64,000 bases of DNA from Octopus sinensis (GCF_006345805.1 NC_042997.1:93124001-93188000); one strand, 5' to 3'; positions 1 to 61,679 are shown, numbered from the stretch's first letter. Notes: generated from the letters alone by a model not told the origin. Made by a program: numbers and translations.

Positions 1-742
1 ATTTTCGTGGTTGAAACCTTTTGGATTAACTGGTGCTAGAGTGAGCAATATAGTGACCACTCTCTTATATTTATTTTGTAAAAATATTATAATATGTTAT
101 AAAATATTATAATAATCCAGGTTTCTCGTAGCACTAGGCCACTTGGTGTTGAATAAATATACTATTAAATTAGTATCTAATTCTCTCTCACCCTTATTAA
201 TTAATTATAATTATGCTGCATTTATTTCTAAATGCTGTATTTGTTTTCCGTGAGAGTTTGGCGCGCTGTTGGTTGGGGCATTTGAATTATAACGTCGGAT
301 GTAATCAATTGAACCACACGCGTATTTATCGTTATGGTAAAATCTGGCGTGTGATTGAGTGGATTTCATCCAGATAGTCTTGGCTGACGAGCTACAAATG
401 GATTTTTTGTAAGTATATTACATTTAATTCATTAATAGCGAAACAATTGTCCCAAAATAATCTGTATTTTGTTATTTTTATTTGCCCTGTCCGTGTGAGC
501 TAACAGTCGTACTGACTTTCATGGGAAGCATGTATTTTCGTGGTTGAAACCTTTTGGATTAACTGGTGCTAGAGTGAGCAATATAGTGACCACTCTCTTA
601 TATTTATTTTGTAAAAATATTATATATGTTATAAAATATTATAATAATCCAGGTTTCTCGTAGCACTAGGCCACTTGGTGTTGAATAAATACTATTAAAT
701 AGTATCTAATTCTCATATTCTCTCACCCTTATTAATTAATTA
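1..742 (+). repeat. ~532-bp HHR-containing tandem repeat (retrozyme-like), right end of an array that runs off the window
   Basis: ATTTTCGTGGTTGAAACC recurs at 1 and 534 (533-bp period). The array ends at ...CTCTCACCCTTATTAATTAATTA|CATATATA, the same junction as at 8093. Confidence 0.93.
380..455 (+). ncRNA. Type I hammerhead ribozyme motif (family A)
   Basis: Stem I TTGG(380-383)/CCAA(452-455); core CTGACGA 384-390; stem II closed by GCTA(391-394)/TAGC(436-439); GAAA 440-443; palindromic stem III ACAATTGT; GUC triplet with predicted cleavage after 451. Confidence 0.9.
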
Positions 743-761
743 CATATATATATATATATAT

Positions 762-1030
762 AAACGGCAGTTTGTCTGTCTGTGTGTCTGTGTGTCTGTC
801 AGGTTGAACCCCCACCCTGACCACGGCTTTCAACAACGATTCTGATGAAACTTGACACACACGTAGCCCAATGTCATAATTCAAAACTAACGCAGCGAAA
901 ATTTTGAAAAGTTCCCCCAGTTCTGAAAAAAGAACGATAAATTCGACATGGGTCAGGAATCTAAGCTTTTTATATGCAACACATTTTCTACAGACTGGCT
1001 AGGGGACGCAACTCGACCTTTTTAACTCTC
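762..1030 (+). mobile_element. Non-autonomous Helitron-like 5' segment (also 8113-8379 and 12655-12921)
   Basis: (TA)n-AAACGGCAGTTTGTCTGTCTGTGTGTC...CAACCGATTCTGATGAAACTTGACACACAC resembles, from memory, the 5' ends of invertebrate non-autonomous Helitrons (TA-rich start, short microsatellite, ACCGATT..GATGAAACTT motif). No 5' TC or 3' hairpin-CTRR end is seen. Confidence 0.45.
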
Positions 1031-2156
1031 GGAACACGTGGGGTACGTATCCCAAAATGTATAAAAATGTACAAAAACGGCAAAAAAGCGGGCAGCAATG
1101 TGAGTGACAACAACGAAAAAGTCAAAAGTGACCAAACTGAACAAACGAATGGAAAAGGTTTTTTGATGCACACGACAAAAGCGGTTTATAATAAACCAAG
1201 AGTTTGCAAGTAGCGTCCGAGGACCCTTAGGGTACATCAAAAATTTAAGGTAAAACGTTTGGGGTAGTAGTTATAAAGAAAGTGTAAACAAAAAAAGTAT
1301 TCGAATAACTTGCGGCTGCAGCAGCTATTAGCAGAAGTGGCGGTGTTGGGGTAAAGTCACGAATGTAATTTCTTCCTGGTAGGAATTGGTTGGGTTGAAT
1401 TATCGATAGCTGTTTGATAGTTATTTGGGAGTGAAGAGAAGACATTGCAACCTACATATGTATATATATGTATGTATACACACTCATATATGCATATATG
1501 CATATACATAAACATATATATATATAAGTACGCACACACATTTATAGAACAATATACCTCATACCACCTAACTTTATGGTCTTATATATATATATAAACT
1601 TACTGTTAACAAAAGTCGGTATGCGTGGCGTTCAATTATTCCATAAATGAAAAATGCATTTAATACTACAAAACGTACACATGGGACGGACACAAGGACC
1701 CTAATCTTTCCTCAGTTATCGACCAAAAATAGTAATACCCAGTTTCGTGCCTTTATATGTATATCAACGTGAGCGCGTGCGCACACACACGTGGCAGTAA
1801 ACGTCACCAAACTATATTTCTCACAATGAGAAAACATTTTCCCTTCATGTGAGCACTTGAAATACAGTTTTCCAATAATTGTAAATGTTGTTGTTGTAAA
1901 AACATACACTGTTAAATTTTTTTTTCCTTTTAATTCTCACAATTAAGTGAGAAAAATATTCAATTAACGTGAACCACTAACTTGGAAGACAGATACGCCT
2001 CCAAACAAAAAATTCTCACAATTAAGTGAGAAAAAATATTCACTCCACTGCAGGTAGACCAGAATTTAGAATCCAGTAGGACTTCCTGCTTGTACAAAAA
2101 AAAATTGCCGCAAAACAAAAAATTCCATCTGGACCCAAGAAACAGAATCTGACCTT

Positions 2157-2890
2157 ACAATGATTGTCCCTTCACAGCACTCAGCCTCTCGTGCCGAGAG
2201 ACGCGGGCTACCAGACAGGAAGTCCCTAAGGGCCTCACCATGATCCAGCTTTTTGCTCCTCCCGAACAACACGGCAAAGTGCTTGTAAAGTGCCTCATAC
2301 ATCTCGCCCCATCCGTCGACCGAACTCCCATTATCGTCAATCAGAGACCTAATTGTGGCATTATTGCCATGCTGGGTTTCTACCGCACGGGCAATCCGGC
2401 AACATTAATTCCCTCACAGCTCAATGTTCGCACTTTAGCACGAACTCTATTCCTCATGTTTGGCTTTGAGGTGACGGTTCAAAGCCGTTCTCGCTGCCAA
2501 AATGTGGGATGCGGAACCCAACCTCAACGCCTCTTCTAAGTCCTTAACTAGTTGCCCTTCTATTCTGGCATTATCTAGTCTTAGCTGACGGCTAAACCTA
2601 ACAGGCTCAAAACGAATGGCTTCTTGAGGGCGAACCACTATCTGTTATTAACCACGGAGCCGGTTAACGCCCTCTGTGCTATTTAGTAGAAAGGATGCGG
2701 TATGCCTCGCAAGTCAAAATATACTTGTTCAGCTTCAAGTAACCGGATCTGCTCTTAACTGTACTGTCTATGTTCAGCCTACACTCGACCATTCTATGGT
2801 CAGTGTAGGACAATTGAACAAGCTGTGGACAACTAACGCTAGCCTTATCTCTAGATCTCGGACACATCTATGCTGTCGTCTGGGGAGTCG
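2157..2890 (-). pseudogene. L1/Tx1-clade LINE ORF2 fragment (end of APE domain plus linker), frameshifted
   Basis: Minus-strand translation gives YTDHRMVECRLNIDSTVKSRSGYLKLNKYIL (SDH..GYWKLN-type), WFALKKAIRF and ETQHGNNATIRSLIDDNG...YKHFAVLF...RLSAREAECCEG. Confidence 0.75.
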
Positions 2891-4439
2891 TGTTTTTCTT
2901 TGCACTGGGTGCCTCAGATACCAAGGGGGTGGGGGATTTTGTTATTGTAGGGGCTTGTGTCTTCAGGGGTTGGGTCGTTTTGTTTGCGTGTTTGGGGCTG
3001 GCACCGCAACTGAGGGGAATGTTTGTCTTTGTAGGGGCTGGTGTGTGTGTAAGCTTGGGATTGTTTTCCCAATTGTAGAGCCTGGTGGCTGTAAAAGTTT
3101 ATCATTCTTTAGTGTCTCCTCCTCCTTCTTTCTCTCCTCACTATGGAGCCGGATGTGACCTTCTTTTCACATTCATTACAGGTGGTTTTTTCCTCCACCT
3201 GTATTTGAAATGTTCTCACCCACGAGAACATTTCTATGTCTCACCGGAAGACATTTCTATGTCTTGTTACTCAATACTTTTGTAAAGAACAAATTTGTTA
3301 TTCTATGGGAGTCCGATAAATTCAATTAGGGTAGTTGGTAAACAGTCTGTCTAGCATTTTGCATTTATAATATATGGATTTATATTTTAGTCTTAGATTA
3401 CATTGTCCGTTCTTTGTTTGTAAATCATGCTTTGTGAATACATTAGCTGAGTTAGATTTCCTTTTTAGTCATACAGGATTGCGCTGTTTATCGGTGTCCA
3501 TGTAATTTTCTAGTCCTCGATTACCATACCTTCTCATAGTCGCTGTCATGTATCGTGCTTAGAAATAATCAACATTCTGAAAGTGTACATCGAATCACGT
3601 GTTGATCTCGTCTTTTCCCCCGAAGTCCTGCCAAATAAACGAAATCTTACATTATCATATAATGGTTTACACAAGTAGCTCTTAAACTAAGCGGCAGTAC
3701 CTCCTACGGAGCGTTGTGAGCAACAAGAGGGCCAAAATTGTCAAGAAGATGTTATGGAGAAGCTCAGAATTTAGATAGACCTGTGATTTCTTTTTTGAGA
3801 AGTAAAATATTTAGATATTTATTGCAGATATGATAATTGTATTTTAAACATAGTCAAAATATTTAATTATTTGGAATATGAATCATTGTTATCAGTGAAT
3901 ACAAAATGTGACTGATAAGACGCCTGGGCCCAATATAATTGTATGAGATAAGTGCACACTATTTTAAAACCAAATAGATAATTAATCACTGCATAAAATT
4001 AAACAATACACGAGCGCACATGAACATGCATGCATTTAAATAGTCAATTTCTCCTGATAAGAAAAGCTAAATTTTAAACTCCCACCCAAATCAGTCTACC
4101 TTTTCTTCTATTCATTAATTGTTCAATTTCGAAATTCCCACTTGTAAATCTCACAACTCGATAGTTAATATTTGCTGTAACTCAACTGTTTCTTCACACG
4201 AAAATCCGATTCAGGTTTATACTTTCAACACCAGAAACACTCACCATCTTCTTCGCTCATTGGATGCATGTATTAAGTATACGGACAGATGGAATCCTTT
4301 CTTTCATAGATGGACTCAACCAGAAATGACACGGAGCTGAATAACCACATCGACAATAAATAAGCGTTTGAAAGGAAGGAATGTTTACCGCCTGCAAGGG
4401 CCACATTCATTTAAGAAGTGTAGTTCTACATTTCATATT

Positions 4440-5010
4440 GTCATAGAGAATCCACGATGTCCAGCCTGGTCGCAAGCCTGTTCTCTGGCCAGGCCCATAT
4501 CTACCAGATTCTATGCCACAAACTCAACGAAGTCCCAACAGTCACCTACGTCCCCATTTCTGAGAGAAGCTCTCCCTGGTTTCTTCATGGGCAAACATCT
4601 TGCGGTGTCATACAAATTGTATCCCATAAACTACTTATCCTGACCCTTCCCATGACTTCTTCCTTTGTTGTGTGGTCGCATTAATGAAAATTCTTAGTAT
4701 GTTTCTAAAGAGACTGCTGTGAAAAATATCGACAGCTCACAGATTCTGCCGAATTTTTTTCCACGTTTCGCAGGCATAGGTTGTCGTTGCCATAACGATG
4801 ACGTACACAGGTATAGTTTGGTGCCTTGGTTAACGAGGGAGTTGAATCAATCAAGCTTCAGCATCAAATAACTGCCACCTTGCTAAGTTCTTTCTCCACA
4901 TCATTTTTCATGCTTCTATCGTTAGGGATATTGCTGCCCAGGTATGTGATTACTAGAATCTGATCCTCCGCTTAGACTTTAGCAGCTGTTCTTCAACAGT
5001 AATGATTACT
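4440..5010 (-). pseudogene. RTE-clade LINE RT C-terminal relic
   Basis: Minus strand gives ITYLGSNI, IVMATTTYACETWK, DIFHSSLFRNILRI and DHTTKEEVMGRV, typical RTE thumb/3' motifs, with many stops. Confidence 0.7.
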
Positions 5011-5206
5011 TTCGTTTATTCATTACTGATCTGTTGCTAAGACCGGTCGTACAAACAGGAAAGATTCCCTCCAAGCTAATTGAGGAAACGGTAAAAACCA
5101 CACATCCCTTAAAAAAAACGGCTCTTATGCAGGCTGAAACTCCGATCATGTTCATTGAGACGGCGAAGAAGAATTTCTTAAAAGCTTCAGAGAGTGAGGG
5201 AGAGAA

Positions 5207-5247
<41 letters not shown>

Positions 5248-5271
5248 GGGAGACAATGAGAGTTTTATATA

Positions 5272-5283
5272 TACATATATATA
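5272..5283 (+). other. Target-site duplication, left copy (TACATATATATA); right copy 8092-8103, also 741-752
   Basis: The same 12-mer lies on both sides of the HHR insertion. It occurs once at the uninterrupted unit2/unit3 junction (~12634-12654). Each edge overlaps the insert by 1-2 nt. Confidence 0.75.
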
Positions 5284-5437
5284 AAATAAATATAAGAGAG
5301 TGGTCACTATATTGCTCACTCTAGCACCAGTTAATCCAAAAGGTTTCAACCACGAAAATACATGCTTCCCATGAAAGTCAGTACGACTGTTAGCTCACAC
5401 GGACAGGGCAAATAAAAATAACAAAATACAGATTATT

Positions 5438-5513
5438 TTGGGACAATTGTTCGCTATTAATGAATTAAATGTAATATTACTTACAAAAAATCCATTTGTA
5501 GCTCGTCAGCCAA
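5438..5513 (-). ncRNA. HHR family A, minus strand, one A missing from GAAA
   Basis: Plus strand reads TTGGGACAATTGTTCGCTA (GTTC rather than GTTTC) ... TCGTCAGCCAA. The lost base is either a sequencing error or an inactivating mutation. Confidence 0.6.
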
Positions 5514-5967
5514 GACTATCTGGATGAAATCCACTCAATCACACGCCAGATTTTACCATAACGATAAATACGCGTGTGGTTCAATTGATTACATCCGACG
5601 TTATAATTCAAATGCCCCAACCAACAGCGCGCCAAACTCTCACGGAAAACAAATACAGCATTTAGAAATAAATGCAGCATAATTATAATTAATTAATAAG
5701 GGTGAGAGAATTAGATACTAATTTAATAGTATATTTATTCAACACCAAGTGGCCTAGTGCTACGAGAAACCTGGATTATTATAATATTTTAAACATATTA
5801 TAATATTTTTACAAAATAAATATAAGAGAGTGGTCACTATATTGCTCACTCTAGCACCAGTTAATCCAAAAGGTTTCAACCACGAAAATACATGCTTCCC
5901 ATGAAAGTCAGTACGACTGTTAGCTCACACGGACAGGGCAAATAAAAATAACAAAATACAGATTATT

Positions 5968-6044
5968 TTGGGACAATTGTTTCGCTATTAATGAATTAAA
6001 TTTAATATTACTTACAAAAAATCCATTTGTAGCTCGTCAGCCAA
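5968..6044 (-). ncRNA. HHR family A, minus strand, intact core
   Basis: Plus strand reads TTGGGACAATTGTTTCGCTA...TAGCTCGTCAGCCAA, the reverse complement of the full motif. Confidence 0.87.
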
Positions 6045-6659
6045 GACTATCTGGATGAAATCCACTCAATCACACGCCAGATTTTACCATAACGATAAAT
6101 ACGCGTGTGGTTCAATTGATTACATCCGACGTTATAATTCAAATGCCCCAACCAACAGCGCGCCAAAATTACATTTAATTCATTAATAGCGAAACAATTG
6201 TCCCAAAATAATCTGTATTTTGTTATTTTTATTTGCCCTGTCCGTGTGAGCTAACAGTCGTACTGACTTTCATGGGAAGCATGTATTTTCGTGGTTGAAA
6301 CCTTTTGGATTAACTGGTGCTAGAGTGAGCAATATAGTGACCACTCTCTTATATTTATTTTGTAAAAATATTATAATATGTTATAAAATATTATAATAAT
6401 CCAGGTTTCTCGTAGCACTAGGCCACTTGGTGTTGAATAAATATACTATTAAATTAGTATCTAATCTCTCACCCTTATTAATTAATTATAATTATGCTGA
6501 TTTATTTCTAAATGCTGTATTTGTTTTCCGTGAGAGTTTGGCGCGCTGTTGGTTGGGGCATTTGAATTATAACGTCGGATGTAATCAATTGAACCACACG
6601 CGTATTTATCGTTATGGTAAAATCTGGCGTGTGATTGAGTGGATTTCATCCAGATAGTC

Positions 6660-6735
6660 TTGGCTGACGAGCTACAATGGATTTTTTGTAAGTAATATTA
6701 CATTTAATTCATTAATAGCGAAACAATTGTCCCAA
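6660..6735 (+). ncRNA. HHR family A
   Basis: TTGG-CTGACGA(6664-6670)-GCTA...TAGC-GAAA-CAATTG-TC(6731)-CCAA. Confidence 0.88.
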
Positions 6736-7190
6736 AATAATCTGTATTTTGTTATTTTTATTTGCCCTGTCCGTGTGAGCTAACAGTCGTACTGACTTTC
6801 ATGGGAAGCATGTATTTTCGTGGTTGAAACCTTTTGGATTAACTGGTGCTAGAGTGAGCAATATAGTGACCACTCTCTTATATTTATTTTGTAAAAATAT
6901 TATAATATGTTATAAAATATTATAATAATCCAGGTTTCTCGTAGCACTAGGCCACTTGGTGTTGAATAAATATACTATTAAATTAGTATCTAATTCTCTC
7001 ACCCTTATTAATTAATTATAATTATGCTGCATTTATTTCTAAATGCTGTATTTGTTTTCCGTGAGAGTTTGGCGCGCTGTTGGTTGGGGCATTTGAATTA
7101 TAACGTCGGATGTAATCAATTGAACCACACGCGTATTTATCGTTATGGTAAAATCTGGCGTGTGATTGAGTGGATTTCATCCAGATAGTC

Positions 7191-7267
7191 TTGGCTGACG
7201 AGCTACAAATGGATTTTTTGTAAGTAATATTACATTTAATTCATTAATAGCGAAACAATTGTCCCAA
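7191..7267 (+). ncRNA. HHR family A
   Basis: TTGG-CTGACGA(7195-7201)-GCTA...TAGC-GAAA(7252-7255)-CAATTG-TC(7263)-CCAA. Confidence 0.9.
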
Positions 7268-7731
7268 AATAATCTGTATTTTGTTATTTTTATTTGCCCT
7301 GTCCGTGTGAGCTAACAGTCGTACTGACTTTCATGGGAAGCATGTATTTTCGTGGTTGAAACCTTTTGGATTAACTGGTGCTAGAGTGAGCAATATAGTG
7401 ACCACTCTCTTATATTTATTTTGTAAAAATATTATAATATGTTATAAAATATTATAATAATCCAGGTTTCTCGTAGCACTAGGCCACTTGGTGTTGAATA
7501 ATAATATTATTAGTATCTAATCTACTATCACCCATAAATTATAAAATTGATATAAATACTGACTTTGTTTTCTAAATGCTGCTAATGCTGTATTTGTTTT
7601 CCGTGAGAGTTGGCGCGCTGTTGGTTGGGGCATTTGAATTATAACGTCGGATGTAATCAATTGAACCACACGCGTATTTATCGTTATGGTAAAATCTGGC
7701 GTGTGATTGAGTGGATTTCATCCAGATAGTC

Positions 7732-7809
7732 TTGGCTGACGAGCTACAAATGGATTTTTGTAGTAGTAATATTACATTTAATTCATTAATAGCGAAACAA
7801 TTGTCCCAA
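7732..7809 (+). ncRNA. HHR family A
   Basis: TTGG-CTGACGA(7736-7742)-GCTA...TAGC-GAAA(7794-7797)-CAATTG-TC(7805)-CCAA. Confidence 0.88.
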
Positions 7810-9509
7810 AATAATCTGTATTTTGTTATTTTTATTTGCCCTGTCCGTGTGAGCTAACAGTGGTACTGACTTTCATGGGAAGCATGTATTTTCGTGTTGT
7901 TGAAACCTTTTGGATTAACTGGTGCTAGAGTGAGCAATATAGTGACCACTCTCTTATATTTATTTTGTAAAAATATTATAAATGTTTAAAAATATTATAA
8001 TAATCCAGGTTTCTCGTAGCACTAGGCCACTTGGTGTTGAATAAATATACTATTAAATTAGTATCTAATTCTCTCACCCTTATTAATTAATTACATATAT
8101 ATATATATATATAAACGGCAGTTTGTCTGTCTGTGTGTCTGTGTGTCTGTCAGGTTGAACCCCCACCCTGACCACGGCTTTCAACCGATTCTGATGAAAC
8201 TTGACACACACGTAGCCCAATGTCATAATTCAAAACTAACGCAGCGAAAATTTTGAAAAGTTCCCCCAGTTCTGAAAAAAGAACGATAAATTCGACATGG
8301 GTCAGGAATCTAAGCTTTTTATATGCAACACATTTTCTACAGACTGGCTAGGGGACGCAACTCGACCTTTTTAACTCTCGGAACACGTGGGGTACGTATC
8401 CCAAAATGTATAAAAATGTACAAAAACGGCAAAAAAGCGGGCAGCAATGTGAGTGACAACAACGAAAAAGTCAAAAGTGACCAAACTGAACAAACGAATG
8501 GAAAAGGTTTTTTGATGCACACGACAAAAGCGGTTTATAATAAACCAAGAGTTTGCAAGTAGCGTCCGAGGACCCTTAGGGTACATCAAAAATTTAAGGT
8601 AAAACGTTTGGGGTAGTAGTTATAAAGAAAGTGTAAACAAAAAAAGTATTCGAATAACTTGCGGCTGCAGCAGCTATTAGCAGAAGTGGCGGTGTTGGGG
8701 GTAAAGTCACGAATGTAATTTCTTCCTGGTAGGAATTGGTTGGGTTGAATTATCGATAGCTGTTTGATAGTTATTTGGGAGTGAAGAGAAGACATTGCAA
8801 CCTACATATGTATATATATGTATGTATACACACTCATATACATGCATATATGCATATACATAAACATATATATATATAAGTACGCACACACATTTATAGA
8901 ACAATATACCTCATACCACCTAACTTTATGGTCTTATATATATATATAAACTTACTGTTAACAAAAGTCGGTATGCGTGGCGTTCAATTATTCCATAAAT
9001 GAAAAATGCATTTAATACTACAAAACGTACACATGGGACGGACACAAGGACCCTAATCTTTCCTCAGTTATCGACCAAAAATAGTAATACCCAGTTTCGT
9101 GCCTTTATATGTATATCAACGTGAGCGCGTGCGCACACACACGTGGCAGTAAACGTCACCAAACTATATTTCTCACAATGAGAAAACATTTTCCCTTCAT
9201 GTGAGCACTTGAAATACAGTTTTCCAATAATTGTAAATGTTGTTGTTGTAAAAACATACACTGTTAAATTTTTTTTTCCTTTTTTAATTCTCACAATTAA
9301 GTGAGAAAAATATTCAATTAACGTGAACCACTAACTTGGAAGACAGATACGCCTCCAAACAAAAAATTCTCACAATTAAGTGAGAAAAATATTCACTCCA
9401 CTGCAGGTAGACCAGAATTTAGAATCCAGTAGGACTTCCTGCTTGTACAAAAAAAAATTGCCGCAAAAAAAAAAATTCCATCTGGACCCAAGAAACAGAA
9501 TCTGACCTT

Positions 9510-35848: not shown

Positions 35849-36307
35849 AGGTGCAGGTGTGGCAGTGTGAGGGGAAATTTGCTTCCTAACCACGTGGTTC
35901 CGGGTTCAGTCCAACTGCGTGGCACCTTGGACGAATGTCTTCTACTATAGCCCCGGGCCGGCCAAAGCTTTGTGAGTGGATTTGGTAGACGGAAACTGAA
36001 AGAAGCCCGTCGTATATATGTGTGAGTGTGTGTGTGTACGTGTGTGTCTGTGCGTGTGTCTGTGCGTGTATGTGTATGTGTGTGCGTGTGCGTGTGTGTG
36101 TATGAGTTTGTTTCCCACCACCGCTTGACAAACGTATGATTATGTTCTTGTAAATTAGCGGTTTGACAAAATCGAACGATAGAATAAGCACCAGGCTTTA
36201 CAAAATAATTATTCGTATTAGGGTCGATAAGTTTTATCATAATTCTTGAAGCCAGTGCCCCAGTAGGGCCGCAGTTCAATGACTGAAGCAAATAAAAGAT
36301 AAAAGAT
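35849..36307 (+). mobile_element. SINE type B
   Basis: AGGTGCAGGTGTGGC...GGTTCAGTCC..GCGTGGCACCTTGG (CORE-like), internal (TG)n and a ...GACTGAAGCAAATAAAAGAT tail. Confidence 0.8.
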
Positions 36308-37746: not shown

Positions 37747-38174
37747 TACTCTTTTTTTTCTTTACTCTTTTTACTCTTTTTACTTGTTTCAGTCATTTGA
37801 CTGCGGCCATGCTGGAGCACCGCCTTTAGTCGAACAAATCGACCCCGGGACTTATTCTTTGTAAGCCCAGTACTTATTCTATCGGTCTCTTTTGCCGAAC
37901 CGCTAAGTGACGGGGACGTAAACACACCAGCATCGGTTGTCAAGCAATGCTAGGGGAACAAACACAGACACACAAACATATTCACACACACTTATATATA
38001 TACATATATACGATAGGCTTCTTTCAGTTTCCGTCTACCAAATCCACTCACAAGGCATTGGTCGGCCCGGGGCTATAGCAGAAGACACTTGCCCAAGATG
38101 CCATGCAGTGGGACTGAACCCGGAACCATGTGGTTGGTTAGCAAGCTACTTACCAAACAGCCACTCCTGCGCCT
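37747..38174 (-). mobile_element. SINE type B, full length
   Basis: Minus strand starts AGGCGCAGGAGTGGCTG...GGTTCAGTCCCACTGC..CTTGGGCAAGTGTCTT and ends in (AAAAGAGT)n. Confidence 0.87.
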
Positions 38175-45994: not shown

Positions 45995-46313
45995 TATATA
46001 TATGTGTGTGTATGTATGTCTGTATGTATGTATGTATGTATGTATGTATGTATGTTTACATATTATTTACTATTAATATATATATTATTACAATACAATA
46101 ATATTATTTTCCAGCGAAATAAAGCACCATTAAGGTAGAATTACATACAGAAACTAGTGTCACAACAAGGTACCAATTTTTGCTAGAAATAGCAGTCAAT
46201 AATCATTCGACACTAGGTAAAGCTACACTGATGTATAGAAGCAAAGATGCGTGCGGCCGGCGAATATAAAAAAAAATTTGTCTTACCTCTAGGAAGAACG
46301 TCTGAGAAATGGA

Positions 46314-46389
46314 CTACCAGGTACTCGAGTCTCGAACATTTCAGAATACGTTTGTTATCGTAAACTGATTGATCTTCGTCAGCTAGGTC
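46314..46389 (-). ncRNA. Degenerate HHR family B (GAGA in place of GAAA)
   Basis: Minus strand reads ACCTAG-CTGACGA-...-GAGA-CTCGAG-TA-CCTGGT. Confidence 0.45.
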
Positions 46390-46813
46390 CACCAAAGAGA
46401 CTAAATTTAAAATATACGCGACATCAATGCCTGTATACTTGGCCAATAGCCCTTGTACGTGGTTTTCCATTTCTCTGGCGTTCTTCCTAGAGGGTGAATG
46501 AAAAAAAAAATTATATTCGTTGCCTGCACACATCTTTGCCGCTATACATTCAGTGAGGCTTTACCTAGCGGCGAACAATTATCGAGAGCCACTTCCGGCA
46601 GAAATTGGTACCTTGTCGTACCACTATTTCCTGTTTATAATTCTATCTTTACGGTGCTTCATTTCGCTGGAAAATAATATTATTGTATCGTAATAATATT
46701 TATATTTTTGTATAAAACTTTTTCACTGATCTCGGCTCTATTTGTAGCTGGGGCCATTGGCCGAGTATACAGGCATTGATATAGGGAATATTTTAAATTT
46801 AGTCTCTTTGGTG

Positions 46814-46889
46814 AACCTAGCTGACGAGGATCAATCAGTTTTCCAATAACAAACGTATTCTGAAAAGTTCGAAACTCGAGTACTAGGTT
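46814..46889 (+). ncRNA. Type I hammerhead ribozyme motif (family B)
   Basis: Perfect 7-bp stem I AACCTAG/CTAGGTT; CTGACGA 46821-46827; stem II 46828-46870 (G-C closing, two wobbles, then TCAG/CTGA); GAAA 46871-46874; palindromic stem III ACTCGAGT; GUA triplet with cleavage after 46882. Confidence 0.8.
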
Positions 46890-47053
46890 GTCCATTTCTC
46901 TGACGTTCTTTCTAAAGGTAAGAAGAACATTTTTCTTATATTCGCCGCCCGCATATATCTTTGCCTCTATACATTCAATGAAGCTTTTCCTCGCGTCGAA
47001 CGATTGTTGACATTGTTATTGGTACCATGTTGTACCACTATTTCCTATATATA

Positions 47054-47086
<33 letters not shown>

Positions 47087-49931: not shown

Positions 49932-52070
49932 TTAAGTTGAAATTCTACTCAGCTCAATGGAATATTTTCGTTTTCGCTCTACTTGCAAAAGTTCTATTTG
50001 TTTTCTTTTCCTAGTGGATGTACTCGTTGGTTCGACTACTCTTTCAGGTACGGGGACGTCAAAAATGTCATAAAGAAATTCCATTGGTTCTTCATGTCTT
50101 ACTCTTTCCTCTGTAAACTTATTTTTCAGTTGGTTTAAATGTCTTTGTGTTCCCACGTATGACCTTTTACCATGTACGTTATTGTTCCTAAACGTTTACT
50201 TATTATACGTTCTTCTTCCTAACTTTCCTTTCCGTTTCTGTATATTTTTAAAAACACCTTATCACCAATTTTGAAGTATTTTATCTTATTTTCGGTGTTT
50301 CTCTCCATTTTTCTTTTCTTCTCGGTAGTAATTTGTCAAATATTAACCTGTCTTTCTTGAAGAACATTATTTCAGCCAGCGACAAACCTGAAGTGGTGTT
50401 GGGGTTAGGTGTTATTCGGTAGGCACTTAAGAACTGTGTCAATACAGTATCAGCTAGTAACTCATTCCTAGATTTTTTTCAGCGCCTTCTTAAACGTACC
50501 TACAAAACGTTCCGCTAGTTCATTTAATCTCCGATGGTAATATGATTCATTGCATGCATTTTGCAAAAGGTTTTAAATTCCTTCGACGTGAACTGTGTTC
50601 CGTTATCAGACACTTTGGTGTCTAGGGCGCCATATCGCGCAAAAAGTTCGTTCAGAAATTCCATTGTTACTTTGGGGGTTAGCTTCCTAATTTACATATT
50701 TCCGGCCATTTCGTGTAACTATCCACAACTATTAGATAATACCCTCCATTTAACGGTCCTGTGAAGCCTATGTCAGGACCAAAGTATGTCAGTCTTGGGC
50801 CAAGGCTGAATTTTTATAGTTGGTGCTTTTGCTGCCAGGGCACAACCTCTGCAGGCTTTCACCAATTTTTCAATATCCTGATCCATATTCGGCCAGTAGA
50901 CGTAGCTCCTCATCAGTGCTTTCATTCTCGCAATTCCTGGATGTCCCATGTGGAATTCTTTTAGCATACATTTTTGTGAACAAACAGGTATTACAACACT
51001 CTGAGCGTACATAAGTACGTCATTACATATCGAATACCATTTCGAAACTGCGTCACGCTCGGCTACATGAGTTTTTGTACTTGTTTCTGACTTCACTATA
51101 TTTTTCCTTTTTAATAAGAACACATCCTTCTCTGCTTTAATTTTTATTTCCTCTAAAGTGACAGATAGTTCGCGTACTACGTTGCAGAGTATATTTTTTA
51201 ATTTCGATTTCAGATTTTAATGCCGCTACTACTGTCCTCTAGCAGTTCATTGTATTTAGGTATCGATCTCGACATCCCATCCGCATGTCCCAGTTTTTTC
51301 GATGGTAGAAATTCCATCTTAAAGTCATAAATAAGCAGGATCCAATGGGTGGTGATCTGTCTGCAGGCTGGATTTCTTTCTATGTATGAATTTATGAAAT
51401 TTTTTCACTGCAAAAATAATAGTTAATGCCTCTTTCTCACTTTAGTTGTAGTTTTTTTCCAGCCTCCAACAATGAACGTGACTATTTTCATGCTTGTGTA
51501 AAATTACCGCTCATGTACCACTTTCGCTAGCATCTGATGTTACTATTATTTTAAAATTTGGATCAAAGTACGATAACAGTTCCGATGTTAAAACTTTTGT
51601 AATGTCTTCGAACGCTTTTTGGCACCTGTTCGACGAATACCATTTAACGTATTGTGCTAAGAACACCCCTAAACAACCTAGATTATTTAGGGGTGCTCTT
51701 AGCTTATGCATATTCAGTATATATGTTTGGTAATAGTTTGCGAGCCCCAAGAACGCTTGTAACGTTGTAATATTTTTCGGGGGAGGCATACTTTTTATTG
51801 CAGTTGATCTTGAAGGATCTGGCCTGCGACTATTTTTATCGATAACTTGCTTTAAATACTTTATTCCTGGCAGGAAAAATTCGCATTTTTCCGCGCTAAG
51901 TTTTAAAAAATCCATACTCCTTTATTCTTACAAAGACCTTTTTAACGTGTTCCTCATGCTGGCCTCGAGACTCACTTTTTATGAGTATGTCATCTCCAAG
52001 TAAACTATAACGAAATCCGTATCTGCAAGCATTGTGTCCATTACCTATTGGAAAATACTAGATGCTACTA
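49932..52070 (-). pseudogene. Ty3/Gypsy LTR retrotransposon pol relic (RT, RNase H, integrase), frameshifted, no LTRs seen
   Basis: ASSIFQ*VMDTMLAD..VYL, KCEFFLPGIKYL, LQAFLGLANYY, IIVTSDASESG and EFHMGHPGIARMKALMRSYVYWPNMDQDIEKLVKACRGC (HHCC), plus PQSNNGISER. Confidence 0.9.
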
Positions 52071-52394: not shown

Positions 52395-52645
52395 ACCGAT
52401 TGCGGGAACGTCAACAAACCAGCACCGGTTGTCAAATATAATACAAAACACGTGTGTGTGTGTGTATGTATGTACATATGACGGGCTTCCTTTAGTTCCC
52501 AACTGCTAAATCCGTTTACAAGGTTTTGGTTGGCCCAAGGCTATAATAGAAAACATTTTTTCAAGGATCCATGCAGTAGGACTGAACCCAAGACCTCATG
52601 GTTGACAAGCAAACTTCTTAACCACACAGCCACGACTGCACCTTT
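52395..52645 (-). mobile_element. SINE type B, partial
   Basis: AGCACCGGTTGTCAA, GACGGGCTTC and CACACAGCCACGACTGCACCT. Confidence 0.7.
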
Positions 52646-54023: not shown

Positions 54024-54083
54024 TATATAGATACATAGATACATACACACACATACACACACACACATATATATGTATATAAG

Positions 54084-54114
<31 letters not shown>

Positions 54115-54280
54115 GTATGTATGTATATATGTATATATATACATGTATATAAGTATAATGTATATATATATATATATAAGTATATATGCATATATATATA
54201 TATATATATGTATGTATATATGTATATATATAGATGTATATAAGTATAAATGTATATATATATATGTATATAAGTATATA

Positions 54281-54323
<43 letters not shown>

Positions 54324-54376: not shown

Positions 54377-54465
54377 TTTCATTCTACACGTGTTTCGAAA
54401 GGCACAAATTACCAAAATCCGATTGAATAATGGGACCATATTGTGTCTTTCTCTTCAGGAAGAAA
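54377..54465 (-). ncRNA. Type I hammerhead ribozyme motif (family C)
   Basis: Minus strand: TTTCTTC-CTGAAGA-GAAAGACACAA...TTGTGCCTTTC-GAAA-CACGTG-TA-GAATGAAA. Stem II is 10 of 11 bp, stem III is the palindrome ACACGTGT, the triplet is GUA, and stem I is 7 bp with one bulge. Confidence 0.82.
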
Positions 54466-54696
54466 AAAGGAAATCCGTTGGAAAAACAAAAACAGAACAG
54501 AGGCGGAGCAAAAAACAAATACATATATATATATATATATATGTATGTATATATATGTATATATGTGTGCGTGTGTATGGAATTTTGGGACTAATGGGTG
54601 GCTAATATGTATGTCAATTAGTGTGTGTTGAGTAAAGCACGTTCACAGTTTGGGCTGCCTGGTACCGTCCACGGTTGGGGTATATATATATACATA

Positions 54697-57867: not shown

Positions 57868-58279
57868 TACTCTTTACTCTTTTACTTGTTTTAGTCATTT
57901 GACTGCGGCCATGCTGGAGCACCGCCTTTAATCGAGCAACTCGACCCCGGGACTTATTCTTTTGTAAGCCCAGTACTTATTCTATCGGTCTCTTTTGCCG
58001 AACCGCTAAGTAACAGGGACATAAACACACCAGCATCGGTTGTCAAGCAATGCTAGGGGACAAACACAGACACACAAACACACACACGCATATATATATA
58101 TATATATATATACATATAAACGACGGGCTTCTTTCAGTTTCCGCCTACCAAATCCACTCACAAGGCTTTGGTCAGCCCGAGGCTATAGTAGAAGATACTT
58201 GCCCAAGGTGCCACGCTGTGGGACTGAACCCGGAACCATGTGGTTGGTAGACAAGCTACTTACCACACAGCCACTCCTG
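57868..58279 (-). mobile_element. SINE type B, full length
   Basis: Collinear with 37747-38174. Confidence 0.87.
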
Positions 58280-58284
58280 TTATT

Positions 58285-58739
58285 TTATCTTCTACTTGTT
58301 TCAGTCATTAGATTGCGGCCATGCTGGGGCACCGCCTTGAAAAACTTTTAGTCGAATGAATCGACCTCAGTACTTATTTTTTTTTTTTTGTTAAGCCTGG
58401 TACATATTCTATGGGTTTCTGCTTGACCGAACCACTAGGTTATACTGGGACTTAAACACACCAACACCGGTTGTCAAGCGGTGGTGGAGAACAAACACAG
58501 ACACCTACACGCACTCACACACACACACGCAACACACACACACAGACACATATATATATATATATAGACACACACACACCACGACGAGATTCTTTCTGTT
58601 TCTGTCTACAAAATCCACTCACAAGGCTTTGGTTGACCCGAGGCTCTAGCAGAAGACAATTGACTAAGGTGCCACGCTGTGCGACTAAAGCCAGAACTAT
58701 TTAGTTGAGAAGTAACCTTCTTACCACACAGCCACGCCC
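58285..58739 (-). mobile_element. SINE type B, older copy abutting the previous one
   Basis: CTTGTTTCAGTCATTAGATTGCGGCC...AAATCCACTCACAAGGC...TTACCACACAGCCAC. Confidence 0.8.
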
Positions 58740-60717
58740 ATTTTTCAATCAAAAATTTTGTAATTATTAATTTATAAGATAGATATCGTTGTTTTTCTTC
58801 TTTAACCCTTCGCCTGTCCAAAGTATTTTTATAAGTTCGTCGTAAACATCCATATTCGTTTTCAGACTTTTAGTTAACGTTCGTTTCATACGATCTGTGT
58901 GATATAAAACTTTCCTTTCATAAGTACCAAGTTACTCTGAAAACAAAATGAGAATGAGATTTATGGGCACCAGAGAAATATGTACAGTGTATTACTTGGA
59001 TGCACGAGACAGTCAAAGGTTGGTTTGCCTTGCATGAGCCAAGTTATGGTCGATTGCATGCAAGCCTTACTAATCTTACCTTTTACTCAAGACTACGTTG
59101 TTAAATGTGTATTTTATTTTAAGATGTTAAAAGTACGATTTGAGGGAGATGCGGCCGCTATTTTTATCAAATGCAGTGAGATGTTTGATATCCTCCACTT
59201 GCAATGTCTTCTTATTCTCGCACAAGCATTTATTTTTTTGAACTGACGAAGACTAATGTTTTAAAGAAATAAAATAAATAACTGGAGACGAATTAAATAT
59301 ATATATTATTGCCTCCGAAAGAAATTTAGGAAGGCGAAATAAAACTGCTTTCGGACTCTGAGAGAGTGAGAAGTTCGTCTGAAATTTCAAGGAGGCTGTA
59401 AAGTTTTAGTTTTAGGGAGACGCACGATAGATCATCACAGACTCCCTTCCACCGTCAAGTAGAGCCTGATTGCCAGATATGTAGCACAAATTAATCCTAA
59501 TCCGAAGGAATGCGTTTCAATGATGCGCCTATGAGATTGATAATACTAATTTCTTTTGTTGGTACAAAACCACAAATGTTTGGAAGAGATGATGTAATCA
59601 ATGTAATTGATTCATGTACTTGATTACTGGTTATTCTATCTGCAACATAAGAATGAAAAGTTAAATTGCTTTAAGTTCCTTTTGAACCAATTTTAAAGAG
59701 ATCTAACTAAACCATGCGAGACATTGTCTTTTTCACTCTCCTGTTTGTGCTTATCCACGCCACAAAACACTCTGATAATATTAGTTGATTTCTGACGTTG
59801 CCTCATGGTCATAAATTTTGGGAGCAGAATGTAGTCAATTAAAACTACCCCAGCATTTCACAAGTATTTTAATTTGTAGACCCTCAAAAGAACCAATGTC
59901 ATTCATTTTGAAATTTGAACTACGAAAAATTACTTTGATAATACTGACTTTAGAAACGGATAATGTTTGAATATATGTTTGACTAATGGACTATAAGAAT
60001 GGAAATGTTTGAATATAGTGGGCGAATTGCTGGTGGGACTTACATGTGTATTTGTGCGAATAGAGTTTAGGCTTCTTTCACTGAAGAATTGTGAGTTCAA
60101 GGTCCTTTTTTCTGTCACCTACGTGATATGCTGCTATACTTTTAAAAGATAACTTCCTTTGCACTCTCTGTCTATTTGGTAGCAGAGAATGTAAGAACGA
60201 AGCATGTATGAGGGGAAGAGTAAAAGAGAAAGAGTGGCGCAGAGAGAAAAGAGAGTGGTGAAAAGGGCATTTTGTGTTTATGTATGTCTCAGACATGGTG
60301 CGATATATTCATGTGTATTTTTATTTAGGCTGACATCTAACAATTATATGACAGTATTTATTAAGTAATACTAATATGTCTGGGTAATCAACGACTGATA
60401 TCTATTATCCCATTTGCCAATGTTTATACGGCACCACTGACTGTTGTGTATCATAGTCCTGCCAGAATACATCATCATCATCATGTCTACTGCCATATAT
60501 TATTCTAAGTATATAGTTTTATGTGCGGGTATGTCTATCTGTATAGATATCTATCCATTCTTCAGCTCTTCCCCACCCTTTCATTGTATATGCATGTTTG
60601 TACGGACTCATATGTACACCCACGCACTCACACACACACACACCACACTCGGGTATGTATGTATATGTGTATATATACATATATATATATATGTGTGTGT
60701 GTATGTATGTATGTATA

Positions 60718-60963: not shown

Positions 60964-60986
60964 ATTGTATATATATATATAATATA

Positions 60987-61027
<41 letters not shown>

Positions 61028-61287
61028 ATATATATATATATATATAGTAATATATATATAATATATATATGTATATATATATATATATGTATATATATGT
61101 ATATATGATATATATATATAGTATATATAGATAGTATATGATATATATATGTATATATGTATATATGTATATATATATATGATATATATATATGTATATA
61201 TATATGTATATATGTATATATATATTATATAATATGTAATAGATTATATATATATATGTATATTATATATATATGTATATATATATG

Positions 61288-61321
<34 letters not shown>

Positions 61322-61401
61322 ATATATATTTCAAAAGTGACCCATGTGAATCATTCGCGATTTGTTTTCCTCCGTCTTCCTTTTCTATTGGACTTTGCTC
61401 T

Positions 61402-61436
61402 GTTTCTGAAGAAGAGCTTTGCTCGAAACGTAAAAC
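61402..61436 (+). ncRNA. Minimal HHR motif with an extra A after the core (family D, Penelope pLTR type)
   Basis: GTTT-CTGAAGA-A-GAGC-TTT-GCTC-GAAA-CG-TA-AAAC. Stem III is the palindrome ACGT and the triplet is GUA. It lies in a ~230-bp block between (TA)n tracts. Confidence 0.65.
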
Positions 61437-61599
61437 CATATTTCTTTCTTTCCCCGAGCGTCTGCTAATACTTTACATGTACCAAGTACTCGCGTTGTTG
61501 TTTTCTGGGTGTTTGTTCGTCGTTTTTTCTTTTCGGGGATTTACTATGTGTGCTTGTAAATACACATATACATACATACATACATATATATATATACAC

Positions 61600-61679
<80 letters not shown>

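What the first reader, a model, noticed from the sequence alone, without database searches (positions are those of the whole stretch)
1..8093. A ~532-bp 'satellite' is a tandem hammerhead-ribozyme array: candidate cephalopod retrozyme / circRNA system
Seen: each unit carries all conserved HHR core nucleotides (CUGACGA, G10.1-C11.1, GAAA, U16.1, C17) with stems I-III in type I order. There are four intact plus-strand copies, one intact and one 1-nt-deleted minus-strand copy, and no ORF. Established: HHR satellites (newt satellite 2, Schistosoma Sm-alpha, cave-cricket pDo500) and metazoan non-LTR retrozymes are transcribed as multimers, self-cleave to monomers and circularise; the described metazoan units are mostly shorter (about 170-400 nt). 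Inference: a plus-strand transcript would be cut after 6731, 7263 and 7805 into ~532-nt monomers that could form an abundant non-coding circRNA spread by a Penelope-type RT. I am not aware of such a family being described in Octopus but cannot check.
Basis: partly seen in the sequence, partly recalled or inferred. Interest (0 to 1): 0.95.

Follow-up and report, generated by a model that had tools for sequence, protein, structure and literature searches.

The report
Hammerhead-ribozyme tandem repeat (retrozyme) in octopod DNA
A ~532-bp non-coding repeat carries a complete type I hammerhead ribozyme and was inserted as a block the way Penelope-type retroelements insert, so it is a new octopod member of the known animal "retrozyme" class, not a new kind of system.

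Summary
A ~530-bp AT-rich repeat lies at 1-742(+), 5283-6167(-) and 6165-8093(+). The 4.5 kb between them (743-5273) is an unrelated tandem element.

Four plus-strand copies and one minus-strand copy carry a complete type I hammerhead. A sixth copy has GAA instead of GAAA. My descriptor expects 0.04 hits per shuffled window. Rfam Hammerhead_1 matches end to end at 27.5 bits, below its gathering score of 34 because a ~40-nt hairpin sits in loop 2.

Helix III is an 8-nt palindrome, unstable as a hairpin and stable as a duplex. That is the double-hammerhead design of newt and other animal ribozymes. The plus-strand monomer RNA folds far better than shuffles (z -6.4 to -7.8).

New here:
- The inverted block 5283-8093 is one insertion with a 9-10-bp target-site duplication in a (TA)n tract. 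An uninterrupted paralogous site at 12636 shows the empty state.
- An unrelated ~414-bp hammerhead repeat at 46075-47060 has the same head-to-head layout next to (TA)n.

Both match the published Penelope-like insertion signature. Cleavage, circles and transcription remain untested. Verdict: a new member of the known metazoan non-LTR retrozymes, of moderate interest.

The parts
1..742 (+). Family 1 repeat, plus array A (about 1.4 units, cut by the window start). It ends at unit position 287 and abuts element E1.
   Evidence: blastn of the unit dimer gives 98.1% identity. The junction with E at 742/743 is identical to the one at 8093/8094.
371..464 (+). Hammerhead copy, C3 at 384, predicted cleavage after 451.
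   Evidence: Descriptor hit. It has a 1-nt deletion in the loop of the helix II hairpin.
5274..5283 (.). Left copy of the target-site duplication, C(AT)4(A).
   Evidence: Left flank plus right flank reproduces the uninterrupted E2/E3 junction at 12615-12665. The filled site has this extra copy, including a second copy of the unique C.
5283..6167 (-). Family 1 repeat, inverted 5'-truncated array (about 1.67 units). On the minus strand it starts at unit position 337 (window 6167) and ends near unit 166 (window 5283).
   Evidence: blastn gives 99.5% identity to the plus unit. Inverted repeats I1-I12.
5429..5522 (-). Hammerhead copy with a core deletion (GAA instead of GAAA), predicted inactive.
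5959..6053 (-). Intact hammerhead copy on the minus strand, C3 at 6040, cleavage after 5972 (between 5972 and 5971).
   Evidence: Descriptor hit.
6165..8093 (+). Family 1 repeat, plus array B (about 3.6 units). It starts at unit position 495 inside helix II and ends at unit 287. It joins the minus array head-to-head with a 3-nt overlap at 6165-6167.
   Evidence: The junction is asymmetric (unit 337 against unit 495), so it is not a simple fold-back.
6651..6744 (+). Hammerhead copy, C3 at 6664, cleavage after 6731.
7182..7276 (+). Reference hammerhead. Helix I strand 7182-7194; CUGACGA 7195-7201; helix II 50-nt hairpin 7202-7251; GAA 7252-7254; helix III ACAAUUGU 7255-7262; C17 at 7263; helix I strand 7264-7276.
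7723..7818 (+). Hammerhead copy, C3 at 7736, cleavage after 7805.
6732..7263 (+). Predicted 532-nt monomer RNA (cleavage site to cleavage site). The neighbouring unit 7264-7805 would give 542 nt.
   Evidence: Plus strand: MFE -153.3 kcal/mol, z -6.4 linear and z -7.8 circular. Minus polarity: -113.9 kcal/mol. GC 0.33.
8094..8103 (.). Right copy of the target-site duplication, at the start of the C(AT)9 tract of element E2.
12636..12657 (.). Paralogous empty site: the uninterrupted C(AT)9AAA tract at the E2/E3 junction.
46075..46452 (-). Family 2 repeat (unit about 414 nt), inverted array. Its hammerhead at 46303-46395 is degenerate (GAGA instead of GAAA, helix I broken).
   Evidence: blastn gives 82-88% identity to the plus copy. 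Sequence read.
46455..47060 (+). Family 2 repeat, plus array (about 1.5 units), head-to-head with the minus array. Its right end runs into (TA)n at 47046-47086.
46808..46895 (+). Second, sequence-unrelated hammerhead. CUGACGA 46821-46827; helix II region 43 nt; helix III ACUCGAGU; A17 at 46882; helix I 7 bp.
   Evidence: Descriptor hit. Rfam Hammerhead_1 27.3 bits, E 4e-5, model 1-45/45..

Best explanation
The ~532-bp repeat is a non-autonomous retroelement of the metazoan non-LTR retrozyme kind. Each unit encodes, on one strand only, a type I hammerhead ribozyme.

Shown from sequence:
- The catalytic core is complete, with G10.1-C11.1.
- Helix I has 13 positions with two internal mismatches.
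- Helix II has 4 bp, followed by a purine-rich internal loop (a remnant of canonical loop 2) and an inserted hairpin.
- Helix III is an 8-nt palindrome, too weak to form as a hairpin.
- The whole monomer RNA is unusually stable in the plus polarity.
- The arrays entered the genome as one block: a tandem array plus an inverted 5'-truncated array, with a 9-10-bp target-site duplication in a (TA)n tract.

Inferred mechanism:
1. An array is transcribed as a multimer.
2. Neighbouring ribozymes pair through their palindromic helix III into double hammerheads.
3. They cut after GUC (window 451, 6731, 7263, 7805).
4. The 532-542-nt monomers, with 5'-OH and 2',3'-cyclic phosphate ends, are circularised by a host RtcB-type tRNA ligase.
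5. A Penelope-like element's reverse transcriptase and GIY-YIG endonuclease copy the circular or multimeric RNA into a (TA)n site. This produces the tandem-plus-inverted arrangement.

After insertion, the block together with the host 4.54-kb element was duplicated at the DNA level as a 7.35-kb higher-order unit.
For: - Motif: six descriptor hits against 0.04 expected per shuffled window. A stricter variant that also requires a palindromic helix III expects 0.01.
- Rfam: Hammerhead_1 matches over the full model at 27.5 and 27.3 bits for two unrelated families. Rescaled to 64 kb and all families, E is about 0.016 each.
- Features the descriptor did not ask for but that are typical of animal hammerheads (PMC4209133): G10.1-C11.1 in both families and perfect 8-nt palindromes. 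The hairpin costs +2.4/+2.9 kcal/mol and the self-duplex gives -6.4/-10.7 kcal/mol.
- Monomer RNA: z -6.4 linear and -7.8 circular. The plus strand is 40 kcal/mol more stable than its complement.
- GC is 0.33. There is no ORF over 76 aa and no homologue.
- Insertion: the filled and empty sites match exactly, with a duplicated C(AT)4.
- The two arms are 99.5% identical, so the insertion is young.
- Family 2 repeats the architecture.
- All four independently mapped array ends lie within 5 bp of (TA)>=4, against a 4.9% background. Counted as two events, P is about 0.002.
- Literature: the PLE hallmarks are partial tandems, an adjacent inverted 5'-truncated copy and (TA)n bias, and PLEs occur in Octopus spp. 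(PMC8557442). Retrozymes are related to PLE pLTRs (bioRxiv 10.64898/2026.07.22.740005). Circularisation by RtcB is shown for mussel and axolotl retrozymes (PMC7229834).
Against: - There are no data on transcription, cleavage or circles.
- The Rfam score is below gathering (27.5 against 34).
- For the isolated ribozyme, the free MFE (-24.3) beats the active fold (-18.7) by pairing G5-A9 with the 3' side of helix III.
- No copies from outside the window could be obtained. Covariation and core-specific conservation therefore could not be tested.
- Inside the window, the non-ribozyme segments at unit positions 1-159 and 311-475 are as invariant as the ribozyme.
- No Penelope RT or GIY-YIG gene was found in the segments of the window I scanned.
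- The 30-40-bp 'tail' often seen at PLE insertions is not evident.
- Unit 7264-7805 carries a diverged block (unit 239-310). Simple rolling-circle copying of one circle does not explain it.
Confidence: 0.72

Rival explanations
1. The repeats are tandemised terminal repeats (pLTRs) of an autonomous Penelope-like element that has lost or never included its ORF at this locus. On this reading they are fragments of the autonomous element itself, not a separate non-autonomous retrozyme family that lives through circular RNA.
For: The architecture is the PLE one (PMC8557442). PLE pLTRs carry hammerheads (PMC4209133). Retrozymes and pLTRs are reported as sister sequences, so the border between the two is soft.
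Against: Arrays of 3.6 and 1.7 units hold no RT or endonuclease remnant between or beside them. The scanned stop-free segments show no Penelope RT or GIY-YIG domain; the only pol remnant is a Ty3/gypsy-type fragment. The ribozyme has a canonical-type helix III and a loop-2 remnant, unlike the minimal PLE variant. The monomer RNA is strongly structured, as retrozyme circles are.
Confidence: 0.13
2. It is ordinary satellite DNA carrying a fossil hammerhead. The copies here arose by DNA-level processes (unequal crossing-over, segmental duplication), and the RNA does nothing today.
For: The satellite/E junction at 742/743 is an exact duplicate of the one at 8093/8094, so at least part of the amplification was DNA-level. 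Recent duplication is enough to explain the near-identity of copies. One copy has a core deletion. The older family 2 inverted copy has decayed in its core. No expression data exist.
Against: - The target-site duplication and the matching empty site show an insertion event.
- The inverted 5'-truncated arm is not a product of unequal crossing-over.
- Two unrelated families share the layout and the (TA)n target.
- RNA stability is strand-specific.
- Five of six ribozyme cores are intact.
Confidence: 0.12
3. It is a chance motif or an assembly artefact. The hammerhead-like pattern is accidental in AT-rich DNA, and the head-to-head junction is a long-read fold-back chimera.
For: The Rfam score is sub-threshold. 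Inverted junctions in repeats are a known assembly problem (PMC8557442 notes this for PLEs).
Against: - Expected descriptor hits are 0.04 and 0.01 per window, against two to four independent families observed.
- The junction is asymmetric (unit 337 against unit 495), and the arms carry private differences.
- Family 2 has arms only 82% identical, which an artefact cannot produce.
Confidence: 0.03

Closest known systems
Metazoan non-LTR retrozymes (Cervera and de la Pena 2020, PMC7229834; coral, mussel, axolotl)
   Same: A type I hammerhead in head-to-tail repeats, GC below 45%, no ORF, no LTR, a target-site duplication longer than 4 bp, a strongly self-paired monomer RNA, and a ribozyme in one polarity only.
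   Different: The unit sequence showed no match to anything I could search. Helix II carries a ~40-nt inserted hairpin, so Rfam's gathering score is not reached. The unit (532 nt) is above the 170-400 nt of the 2020 paper but inside the 51-972 bp range reported in 2026. Expression and circles are not shown here.
Newt satellite 2, Schistosoma Sm-alpha and cave-cricket pDo500 hammerhead satellites
   Same: A transcribed-satellite type of organisation, and a weak helix III with a palindromic loop that favours a double-hammerhead (dimer) mode of cleavage (Forster et al. 1988, as cited in PMC4209133 and PMC7761336).
   Different: No sequence similarity beyond the core was apparent, judged against the Rfam consensus and from memory. 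Here helix III has 2 bp plus a tetraloop, and loop 2 is turned into an internal loop by an inserted hairpin.
Hammerheads in pLTRs of Penelope-like elements (Cervera and de la Pena 2014, PMC4209133; Lunse et al. 2017)
   Same: Association with the PLE-type insertion layout (partial tandem plus inverted 5'-truncated copy, (TA)n targets) and a dimer-competent palindromic helix III.
   Different: PLE ribozymes are 'minimal' variants without a helix III loop, with an extra nucleotide before helix II, and they flank an RT-endonuclease ORF. Families 1 and 2 here have canonical-type cores and no ORF. A separate candidate at 61406-61432 does look like the minimal type.
Plant LTR retrozymes (PMC4918200)
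   Same: Non-autonomous, hammerhead-processed, with circular RNA intermediates.
   Different: The plant elements have type III hammerheads inside LTRs, PBS and PPT motifs, 4-bp target-site duplications, GC above 55% and mobilisation by Ty3/gypsy.
[quoted passage not shown]
   Same: A hammerhead-processed, compact RNA of a few hundred nucleotides.
   Different: Those have ribozymes in both polarities, replicate RNA to RNA, and have no genomic DNA copy.

Membership tests
Hammerhead ribozyme, type I | Conserved core C3-U4-G5-A6-N7-G8-A9, G12-A13-A14, A15.1-U16.1, H17, with helices in the order I(3' strand)-core-II-GAA-III-cleavage-I(5' strand) | tested here: met
   Five family 1 copies and one family 2 copy meet it. 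A sixth family 1 copy lacks one A of GAAA.
Hammerhead ribozyme, type I | Score at or above the Rfam RF00163 gathering threshold (34 bits) | tested here: not met
   27.5 and 27.3 bits over the full model 1-45, E about 4e-5 in 150-nt searches. The deficit comes from a 38-41-nt insertion in loop 2. There was no hit at all in large scans. This is an annotation threshold and does not test catalysis.
Hammerhead ribozyme, type I | Mg2+-dependent self-cleavage 3' of H17 | not testable with these tools
   Needs in vitro transcription of monomer and dimer constructs.
Canonical metazoan (dimer-acting) hammerhead | Helix III of 1-2 bp capped by a small palindromic loop, able to form an extended intermolecular helix III | tested here: met
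   ACAAUUGU and ACUCGAGU are perfect palindromes. Hairpin +2.4/+2.9 kcal/mol; duplex -6.4/-10.7 kcal/mol. Definition from PMC4209133.
Canonical metazoan (dimer-acting) hammerhead | Helix II of about 4 bp with a loop 2 that contacts loop 1 | tested here: inconclusive
   The proximal 4 bp are present and a CA/AA (family 1) or CAA/AAA (family 2) internal loop sits where loop 2 would be. A further hairpin is inserted beyond it. Tertiary contacts cannot be computed here.
Metazoan non-LTR retrozyme | Hammerhead-bearing units in head-to-tail tandem, dimers or longer | tested here: met
   3.6, 1.67 and 1.4 units for family 1; 1.5 units for family 2.
Metazoan non-LTR retrozyme | Low GC (below 45-50%) and no coding capacity | tested here: met
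   GC 0.33. Longest ORF 76 aa, with no record and no homologue.
Metazoan non-LTR retrozyme | Target-site duplication longer than the 4 bp of plant retrozymes, when present | tested here: met
   A 9-10-bp C(AT)4(A), with a paralogous empty site.
Metazoan non-LTR retrozyme | No LTR, PBS or PPT | tested here: inconclusive
   No terminal direct repeats other than the unit itself. PBS and PPT motifs were not searched for specifically.
Metazoan non-LTR retrozyme | Monomer RNA predicted to be stable and highly self-paired | tested here: met
   z -6.4 linear and -7.8 circular, with 65% of bases paired.
Metazoan non-LTR retrozyme | Accumulates as linear and circular monomer RNA in tissues | not testable with these tools
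   No transcriptome data were reachable. The ORF-based look-ups in public assemblies found nothing.
Metazoan non-LTR retrozyme | Co-occurrence with Penelope-like elements in the same genome | tested here: inconclusive
   None in the scanned segments of this window. The literature reports PLEs in Octopus spp. (PMC8557442, PMC13282606). The window's species is inferred only.
Penelope-type insertion | Partial tandem plus an adjacent inverted 5'-truncated copy | tested here: met
   Family 1: 5283-6167(-) joined to 6165-8093(+). Family 2: 46075-46452(-) joined to 46455-47060(+).
Penelope-type insertion | Insertion bias for (TA)n microsatellites | tested here: met
   All four array ends lie within 5 bp of (TA)>=4, against a background of 0.049.
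Penelope-type insertion | A 30-40-bp 'tail' extension at one end | tested here: not met
   Both ends of the family 1 block pass directly from unit sequence into the duplicated target. The paper describes the tail as frequent, not obligatory.

The most novel reading that the evidence does not exclude
This window may capture a young, intact integration event of a hammerhead repeat: a filled site with a target-site duplication, and its empty paralogue 4.5 kb away. Its tandem-plus-inverted architecture in (TA)n would be direct structural evidence that Penelope-type machinery mobilises retrozyme RNA.

In addition, octopod hammerheads may form a subclass with a hairpin inserted into loop 2. Rfam-based annotation cannot see that subclass, so the hammerhead and retrozyme load of these genomes would be badly underestimated. 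This window alone holds two solid and two tentative families in 64 kb.
Probability: 0.3. Interest if true: 0.55.

Novelty: new member of a known kind. Interest (0 to 1): 0.4.

Why it matters
Hammerhead tandem repeats that make small circular RNAs are known from corals, mussels, amphibians and others. The searched literature has no description for octopods, whose genomes are repeat-rich and whose RNA biology is of wide interest.

The practical points are threefold.
1. Standard Rfam annotation misses this family because of the insertion in helix II.
2. The filled and empty sites inside one window, together with the inverted-plus-tandem layout and the (TA)n target, support Penelope-like elements as the mobilising partner. 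A 2020 review still called this link undeducible from the repeats themselves (PMC7761336).
3. The 8-nt palindromic helix III makes a clear and cheap prediction: dimer constructs should cleave and monomers should not.

It does not change what is known about how such elements work.

Tried and rejected
- TRF cannot see a 532-bp period because its limit is 500.
- Rfam scans of 64 kb at gathering and of 16 kb at E<=10 gave no hammerhead. The mir-297/mir-466-type hits there are TA/TG microsatellite hairpins far below threshold.
- I tested whether the 4.54-kb element E between the arrays is a decayed Penelope element with the repeat as its pLTR. There is no Pfam domain in its ten longest stop-free segments. 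The empty-site comparison shows the repeat is an insertion into the E array and not part of E.
I used stop-free segments instead.
- To get outside copies I tried exact look-ups of two satellite ORFs, a homology search with an 85-aa satellite peptide, a pattern scan of metagenome contigs, and a scan of 40 kb of octopod and related DNA fetched around integrase relatives. All were negative.
- A joint covariance model of families 1 and 2 was abandoned. MAFFT misaligns their helix II regions of different length, and no animal collection was available to search with it.
- Compensatory changes between families 1 and 2 are not counted as evidence, because both were found with a descriptor that demands pairing.
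- The idea that the family 2 plus array starts exactly at the cleavage site could not be resolved at 72% identity.
- ARAGORN found no tRNA-like part.

Full report
1. What is there

The first 15.4 kb of the window is a mosaic:
- family 1 repeat, plus strand, 1-742
- element E1, 743-5273
- a 10-bp C(AT)4A, 5274-5283
- family 1 repeat, minus strand, 5283-6167
- family 1 repeat, plus strand, 6165-8093
- element E2, 8094-12635
- element E3, 12636 to about 15400, truncated

E is a 4.54-kb tandem unit. Its ten longest stop-free segments have no Pfam domain.

The repeat unit is 529-542 bp. TRF missed it because its period limit is 500. GC is 0.33. The longest ORF is 76 aa. The recurrent ORF products are not on record, and an 85-aa peptide from the unit has no homologue in 5.8 billion proteins.

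2. The ribozyme

I wrote a type I descriptor requiring CTGANGA, helix II of at least 3 bp, GAA, A15.1-U16.1 with helix III of at least 2 bp, H17, and helix I of at least 4 bp. It hits plus-strand sites with C3/N17 at 384/451, 6664/6731, 7195/7263 and 7736/7805, and a minus-strand site at 6040/5972. Two hundred dinucleotide shuffles of the whole window give 0.04 hits on average. The sixth copy (minus strand, C3 at 5509) reads GAACAATTGTC, a 1-nt deletion in GAAA. A seventh, at 6165-6202, is only the 3' part of a ribozyme, because the plus array starts inside helix II.

Rfam gave nothing on 64 kb at gathering or on 16 kb at E<=10. On a 151-nt stretch, where the filters are lax, Hammerhead_1 (RF00163) aligns end to end (model 1-45/45) to 7189-7269 at 27.5 bits, E 3.7e-5. 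Rescaled to the whole window and all families, that is about 0.016. The gathering score is 34. The alignment shows that the loss comes from a 38-nt insertion in loop 2.

3. Anatomy

- Helix I has 13 positions: CCAA/UUGG, an A-C mismatch, two pairs, an A-A mismatch, then five pairs.
- The core is CUGACGA.
- Helix II is GCUA/UAGC, followed by a CA/AA internal loop where the canonical loop 2 (CAAAUA) would be, and then an inserted hairpin. The 50-nt helix II folds at -13.3 kcal/mol on its own.
- GAA follows.
- Helix III is ACAAUUGU, a perfect palindrome. As a hairpin (2 bp plus tetraloop) it costs +2.4 kcal/mol. As a self-duplex it gives -6.4 kcal/mol.
- C17 is the cleavage nucleotide.

This matches the published description of canonical metazoan type I hammerheads: helix III of 1-2 bp, a small palindromic loop, inefficient as monomers and active as dimers in tandem repeats (PMC4209133; PMC7229834).

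For the isolated ribozyme, the free MFE (-24.3) is an alternative fold that pairs G5-A9 with the 3' side of helix III. The active fold is -18.7. I read this as an 'off' state of monomers. That reading is inference.

4. The RNA as a whole

The 532-nt monomer (6732-7263) folds at -153.3 kcal/mol against -112.9 +/- 6.3 for shuffles (z -6.4). As a circle it folds at -148.9 (z -7.8). The complementary strand reaches only -113.9 (z -4.6). The 40 kcal/mol asymmetry points to selection on the plus-strand RNA. Only that polarity has a ribozyme. This fits retrozymes and does not fit Avsunviroidae.

5. It is an insertion

The uninterrupted E2/E3 junction reads ...TTTTATATATA-C(AT)9-AAACGG (12615-12665). 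At the E1 end the same sequence runs to C(AT)4A and then enters the minus-strand repeat. At 8093/8094 the plus-strand repeat passes into C(AT)9AAACGG. Joining the two flanks reproduces the empty site exactly. The filled site has one extra CATATATAT(A), including a second copy of the only C in the tract.

The 2.81-kb block is therefore a single insertion with a 9-10-bp target-site duplication. It consists of a 1.67-unit inverted array that begins at unit position 337, joined head-to-head with a 3-nt overlap to a 3.6-unit array that begins at unit position 495. The junction is asymmetric and the arms carry private differences, so it is not a fold-back artefact. The arms are 99.5% identical, so the event is young. 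The junction at 742/743 is identical to the one at 8093/8094. The block plus E was therefore later duplicated at the DNA level, giving a 7.35-kb higher-order unit.

6. A second, independent case

The descriptor also hit 46821-46882(+): CUGACGA, a 43-nt helix II region, GAA, helix III ACUCGAGU (palindrome; hairpin +2.9, duplex -10.7 kcal/mol), A17 and a 7-bp helix I. Rfam gives 27.3 bits over the full model.

It shares no sequence with family 1 outside the core. Its unit is about 414 nt. A minus array (46075-46452; 82-88% identical; ribozyme decayed to GAGA) lies head-to-head with a plus array (46455-47060). The right end runs into (TA)n at 47046-47086, and the left end lies in TA-rich sequence.

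All four independently mapped array ends (two per family) lie within 5 bp of a (TA)>=4 run, where 4.9% of window positions do. Counted as two events, P is about 0.002.

7. Link to Penelope-like elements

Craig et al. describe PLE insertions as 5'-truncated, in partial tandems, often with an inverted 5'-truncated copy directly adjacent at the 5' end. They report a (TA)n bias in Naiads and note PLEs in Octopus spp. (PMC8557442). Both hammerhead families in this window show that layout.

A 2020 review stated that the animal repeats show no motif from which to deduce the mobilising element, and proposed PLEs on the basis of co-occurrence (PMC7761336). A 2026 preprint finds retrozymes to be sisters of PLE pLTRs in Xenopus.

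I found no Penelope RT or GIY-YIG domain in the segments of the window that I scanned. The only pol remnant is a Ty3/gypsy-type fragment at 50284-51921(-), with Integrase_H2C2 at 2.4e-15 plus rve and RT_RNaseH_2.

8. Taxon

The integrase fragment's closest named relatives are from Octopus bimaculoides (74-91% identity over parts of the query) and Argonauta hians. One of them maps to assembly GCA_001194135.2. This supports an octopod origin but does not identify the species.

9. What could not be tested

No animal genome or transcriptome collection was reachable. Forty kb of fetched octopod and related DNA contained neither the repeat nor a hammerhead, and a metagenome pattern scan was empty. 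Within the window, variation is concentrated in unit positions 160-310. The ribozyme varies only in the distal hairpin, apart from the single core deletion. Unit positions 1-159 and 311-475 are just as invariant, so there is no power to show core-specific conservation. Cleavage, transcription and circularisation are inferred from the family's biology (PMC7229834).

10. Novelty

- Type I hammerhead retrozymes are established in cnidarians, molluscs (mussel), arthropods and amphibians (PMC7229834).
- Unit lengths of 51-972 bp are reported.
- The giant squid genome paper lists 235 Rfam Hammerhead_1 loci without further analysis (PMC6962438).
- A detailed O. vulgaris repeat annotation lists Penelope-like elements but no hammerhead or retrozyme (PMC13282606).
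- Full-text searches found no description of such a family in Octopus.

This is therefore a new member of a known kind. It has two modestly new aspects: the hairpin inserted into loop 2, which hides it from Rfam thresholds, and the clean integration footprint.

11. Unexplained

Unit 7264-7805 carries a diverged block with indels at unit positions 239-310, while its neighbours are 99.7% identical to each other. Array A (1-742) does not carry the variant, although it shares the downstream junction. Possible causes are heterogeneous RNA templates, template switching or later gene conversion.

Noticed in passing
window 54379-54464 (-), within unique segment 54317-54520: A third hammerhead-like motif: CUGAAGA, helix II GAAAG/CUUUC with a ~47-nt insert, helix III ACACGUGU (8-nt palindrome), A17, but helix I of only 3 bp. 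Rfam Hammerhead_1 gives 14.8 bits, E 0.61. The ~200-bp segment lies between (ATAT)n 54067-54316 and (AT)n 54519-54564. It may be a solo monomer of another family.
   Followed up: partly
window 61406-61432 (+), within unique segment 61330-61565: A minimal hammerhead-like motif of the Penelope type: CUGAAGA, one extra A, helix II GAGC-UUU-GCUC, GAAA, a 4-nt palindrome ACGU with no loop, A17, and helix I AAAC/GUUU. There is no Rfam hit. The 236-bp segment lies between (TA)n 60968-61329 and (AT)n 61566-61641. The relaxed descriptor expects 0.01 hits per shuffled window.
   Followed up: partly
window 743-5273, 8094-12635, 12636 to about 15400: A 4.54-kb element (E) in tandem, with copies 99-100% identical. 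It begins with C(AT)9 and ends with an (AG)n tract. It has no ORF over 160 aa and no Pfam domain in its longest stop-free segments. Its nature is unknown. It is the host of the family 1 insertion.
   Followed up: partly
window 50284-51921 (-): A decayed Ty3/gypsy-type pol: Integrase_H2C2 (2.4e-15), rve and RT_RNaseH_2 fragments in several frames. The closest named relatives are in Octopus bimaculoides and Argonauta hians.
   Followed up: yes
window 35849-36064, 37959-38174, 52430-52637, 58060-58279, 58533-58740: A dispersed repeat of about 210 bp in both orientations (61-87% identity), next to TG/TC microsatellites. It may be a SINE. ARAGORN finds no tRNA-like gene anywhere in the window.
   Followed up: no
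window 1442-1535, 8792-8897, 13334-13448: Rfam hits to mir-297, mir-466, mir-1277 and similar at 20-43 bits (gathering scores 81-100 for the four top-scoring families). They are hairpins formed by TA/TG microsatellites inside element E and are not microRNA genes.
   Followed up: yes
L002 4224-4619 (-), ENA ERZ21867824 contig ctg110287l: A weak GIY-YIG hit on a called gene, in a related assembly of unknown species that was fetched through an integrase relative. It may be a Penelope-like endonuclease remnant. There is no hammerhead in the 20 kb.
   Followed up: no
window 7264-7805 (unit positions 239-310): One unit of the plus array carries a diverged block with several indels, while the neighbouring units are 99.7% identical to each other. 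Array A (1-742) lacks this variant despite the identical downstream junction.
   Followed up: partly
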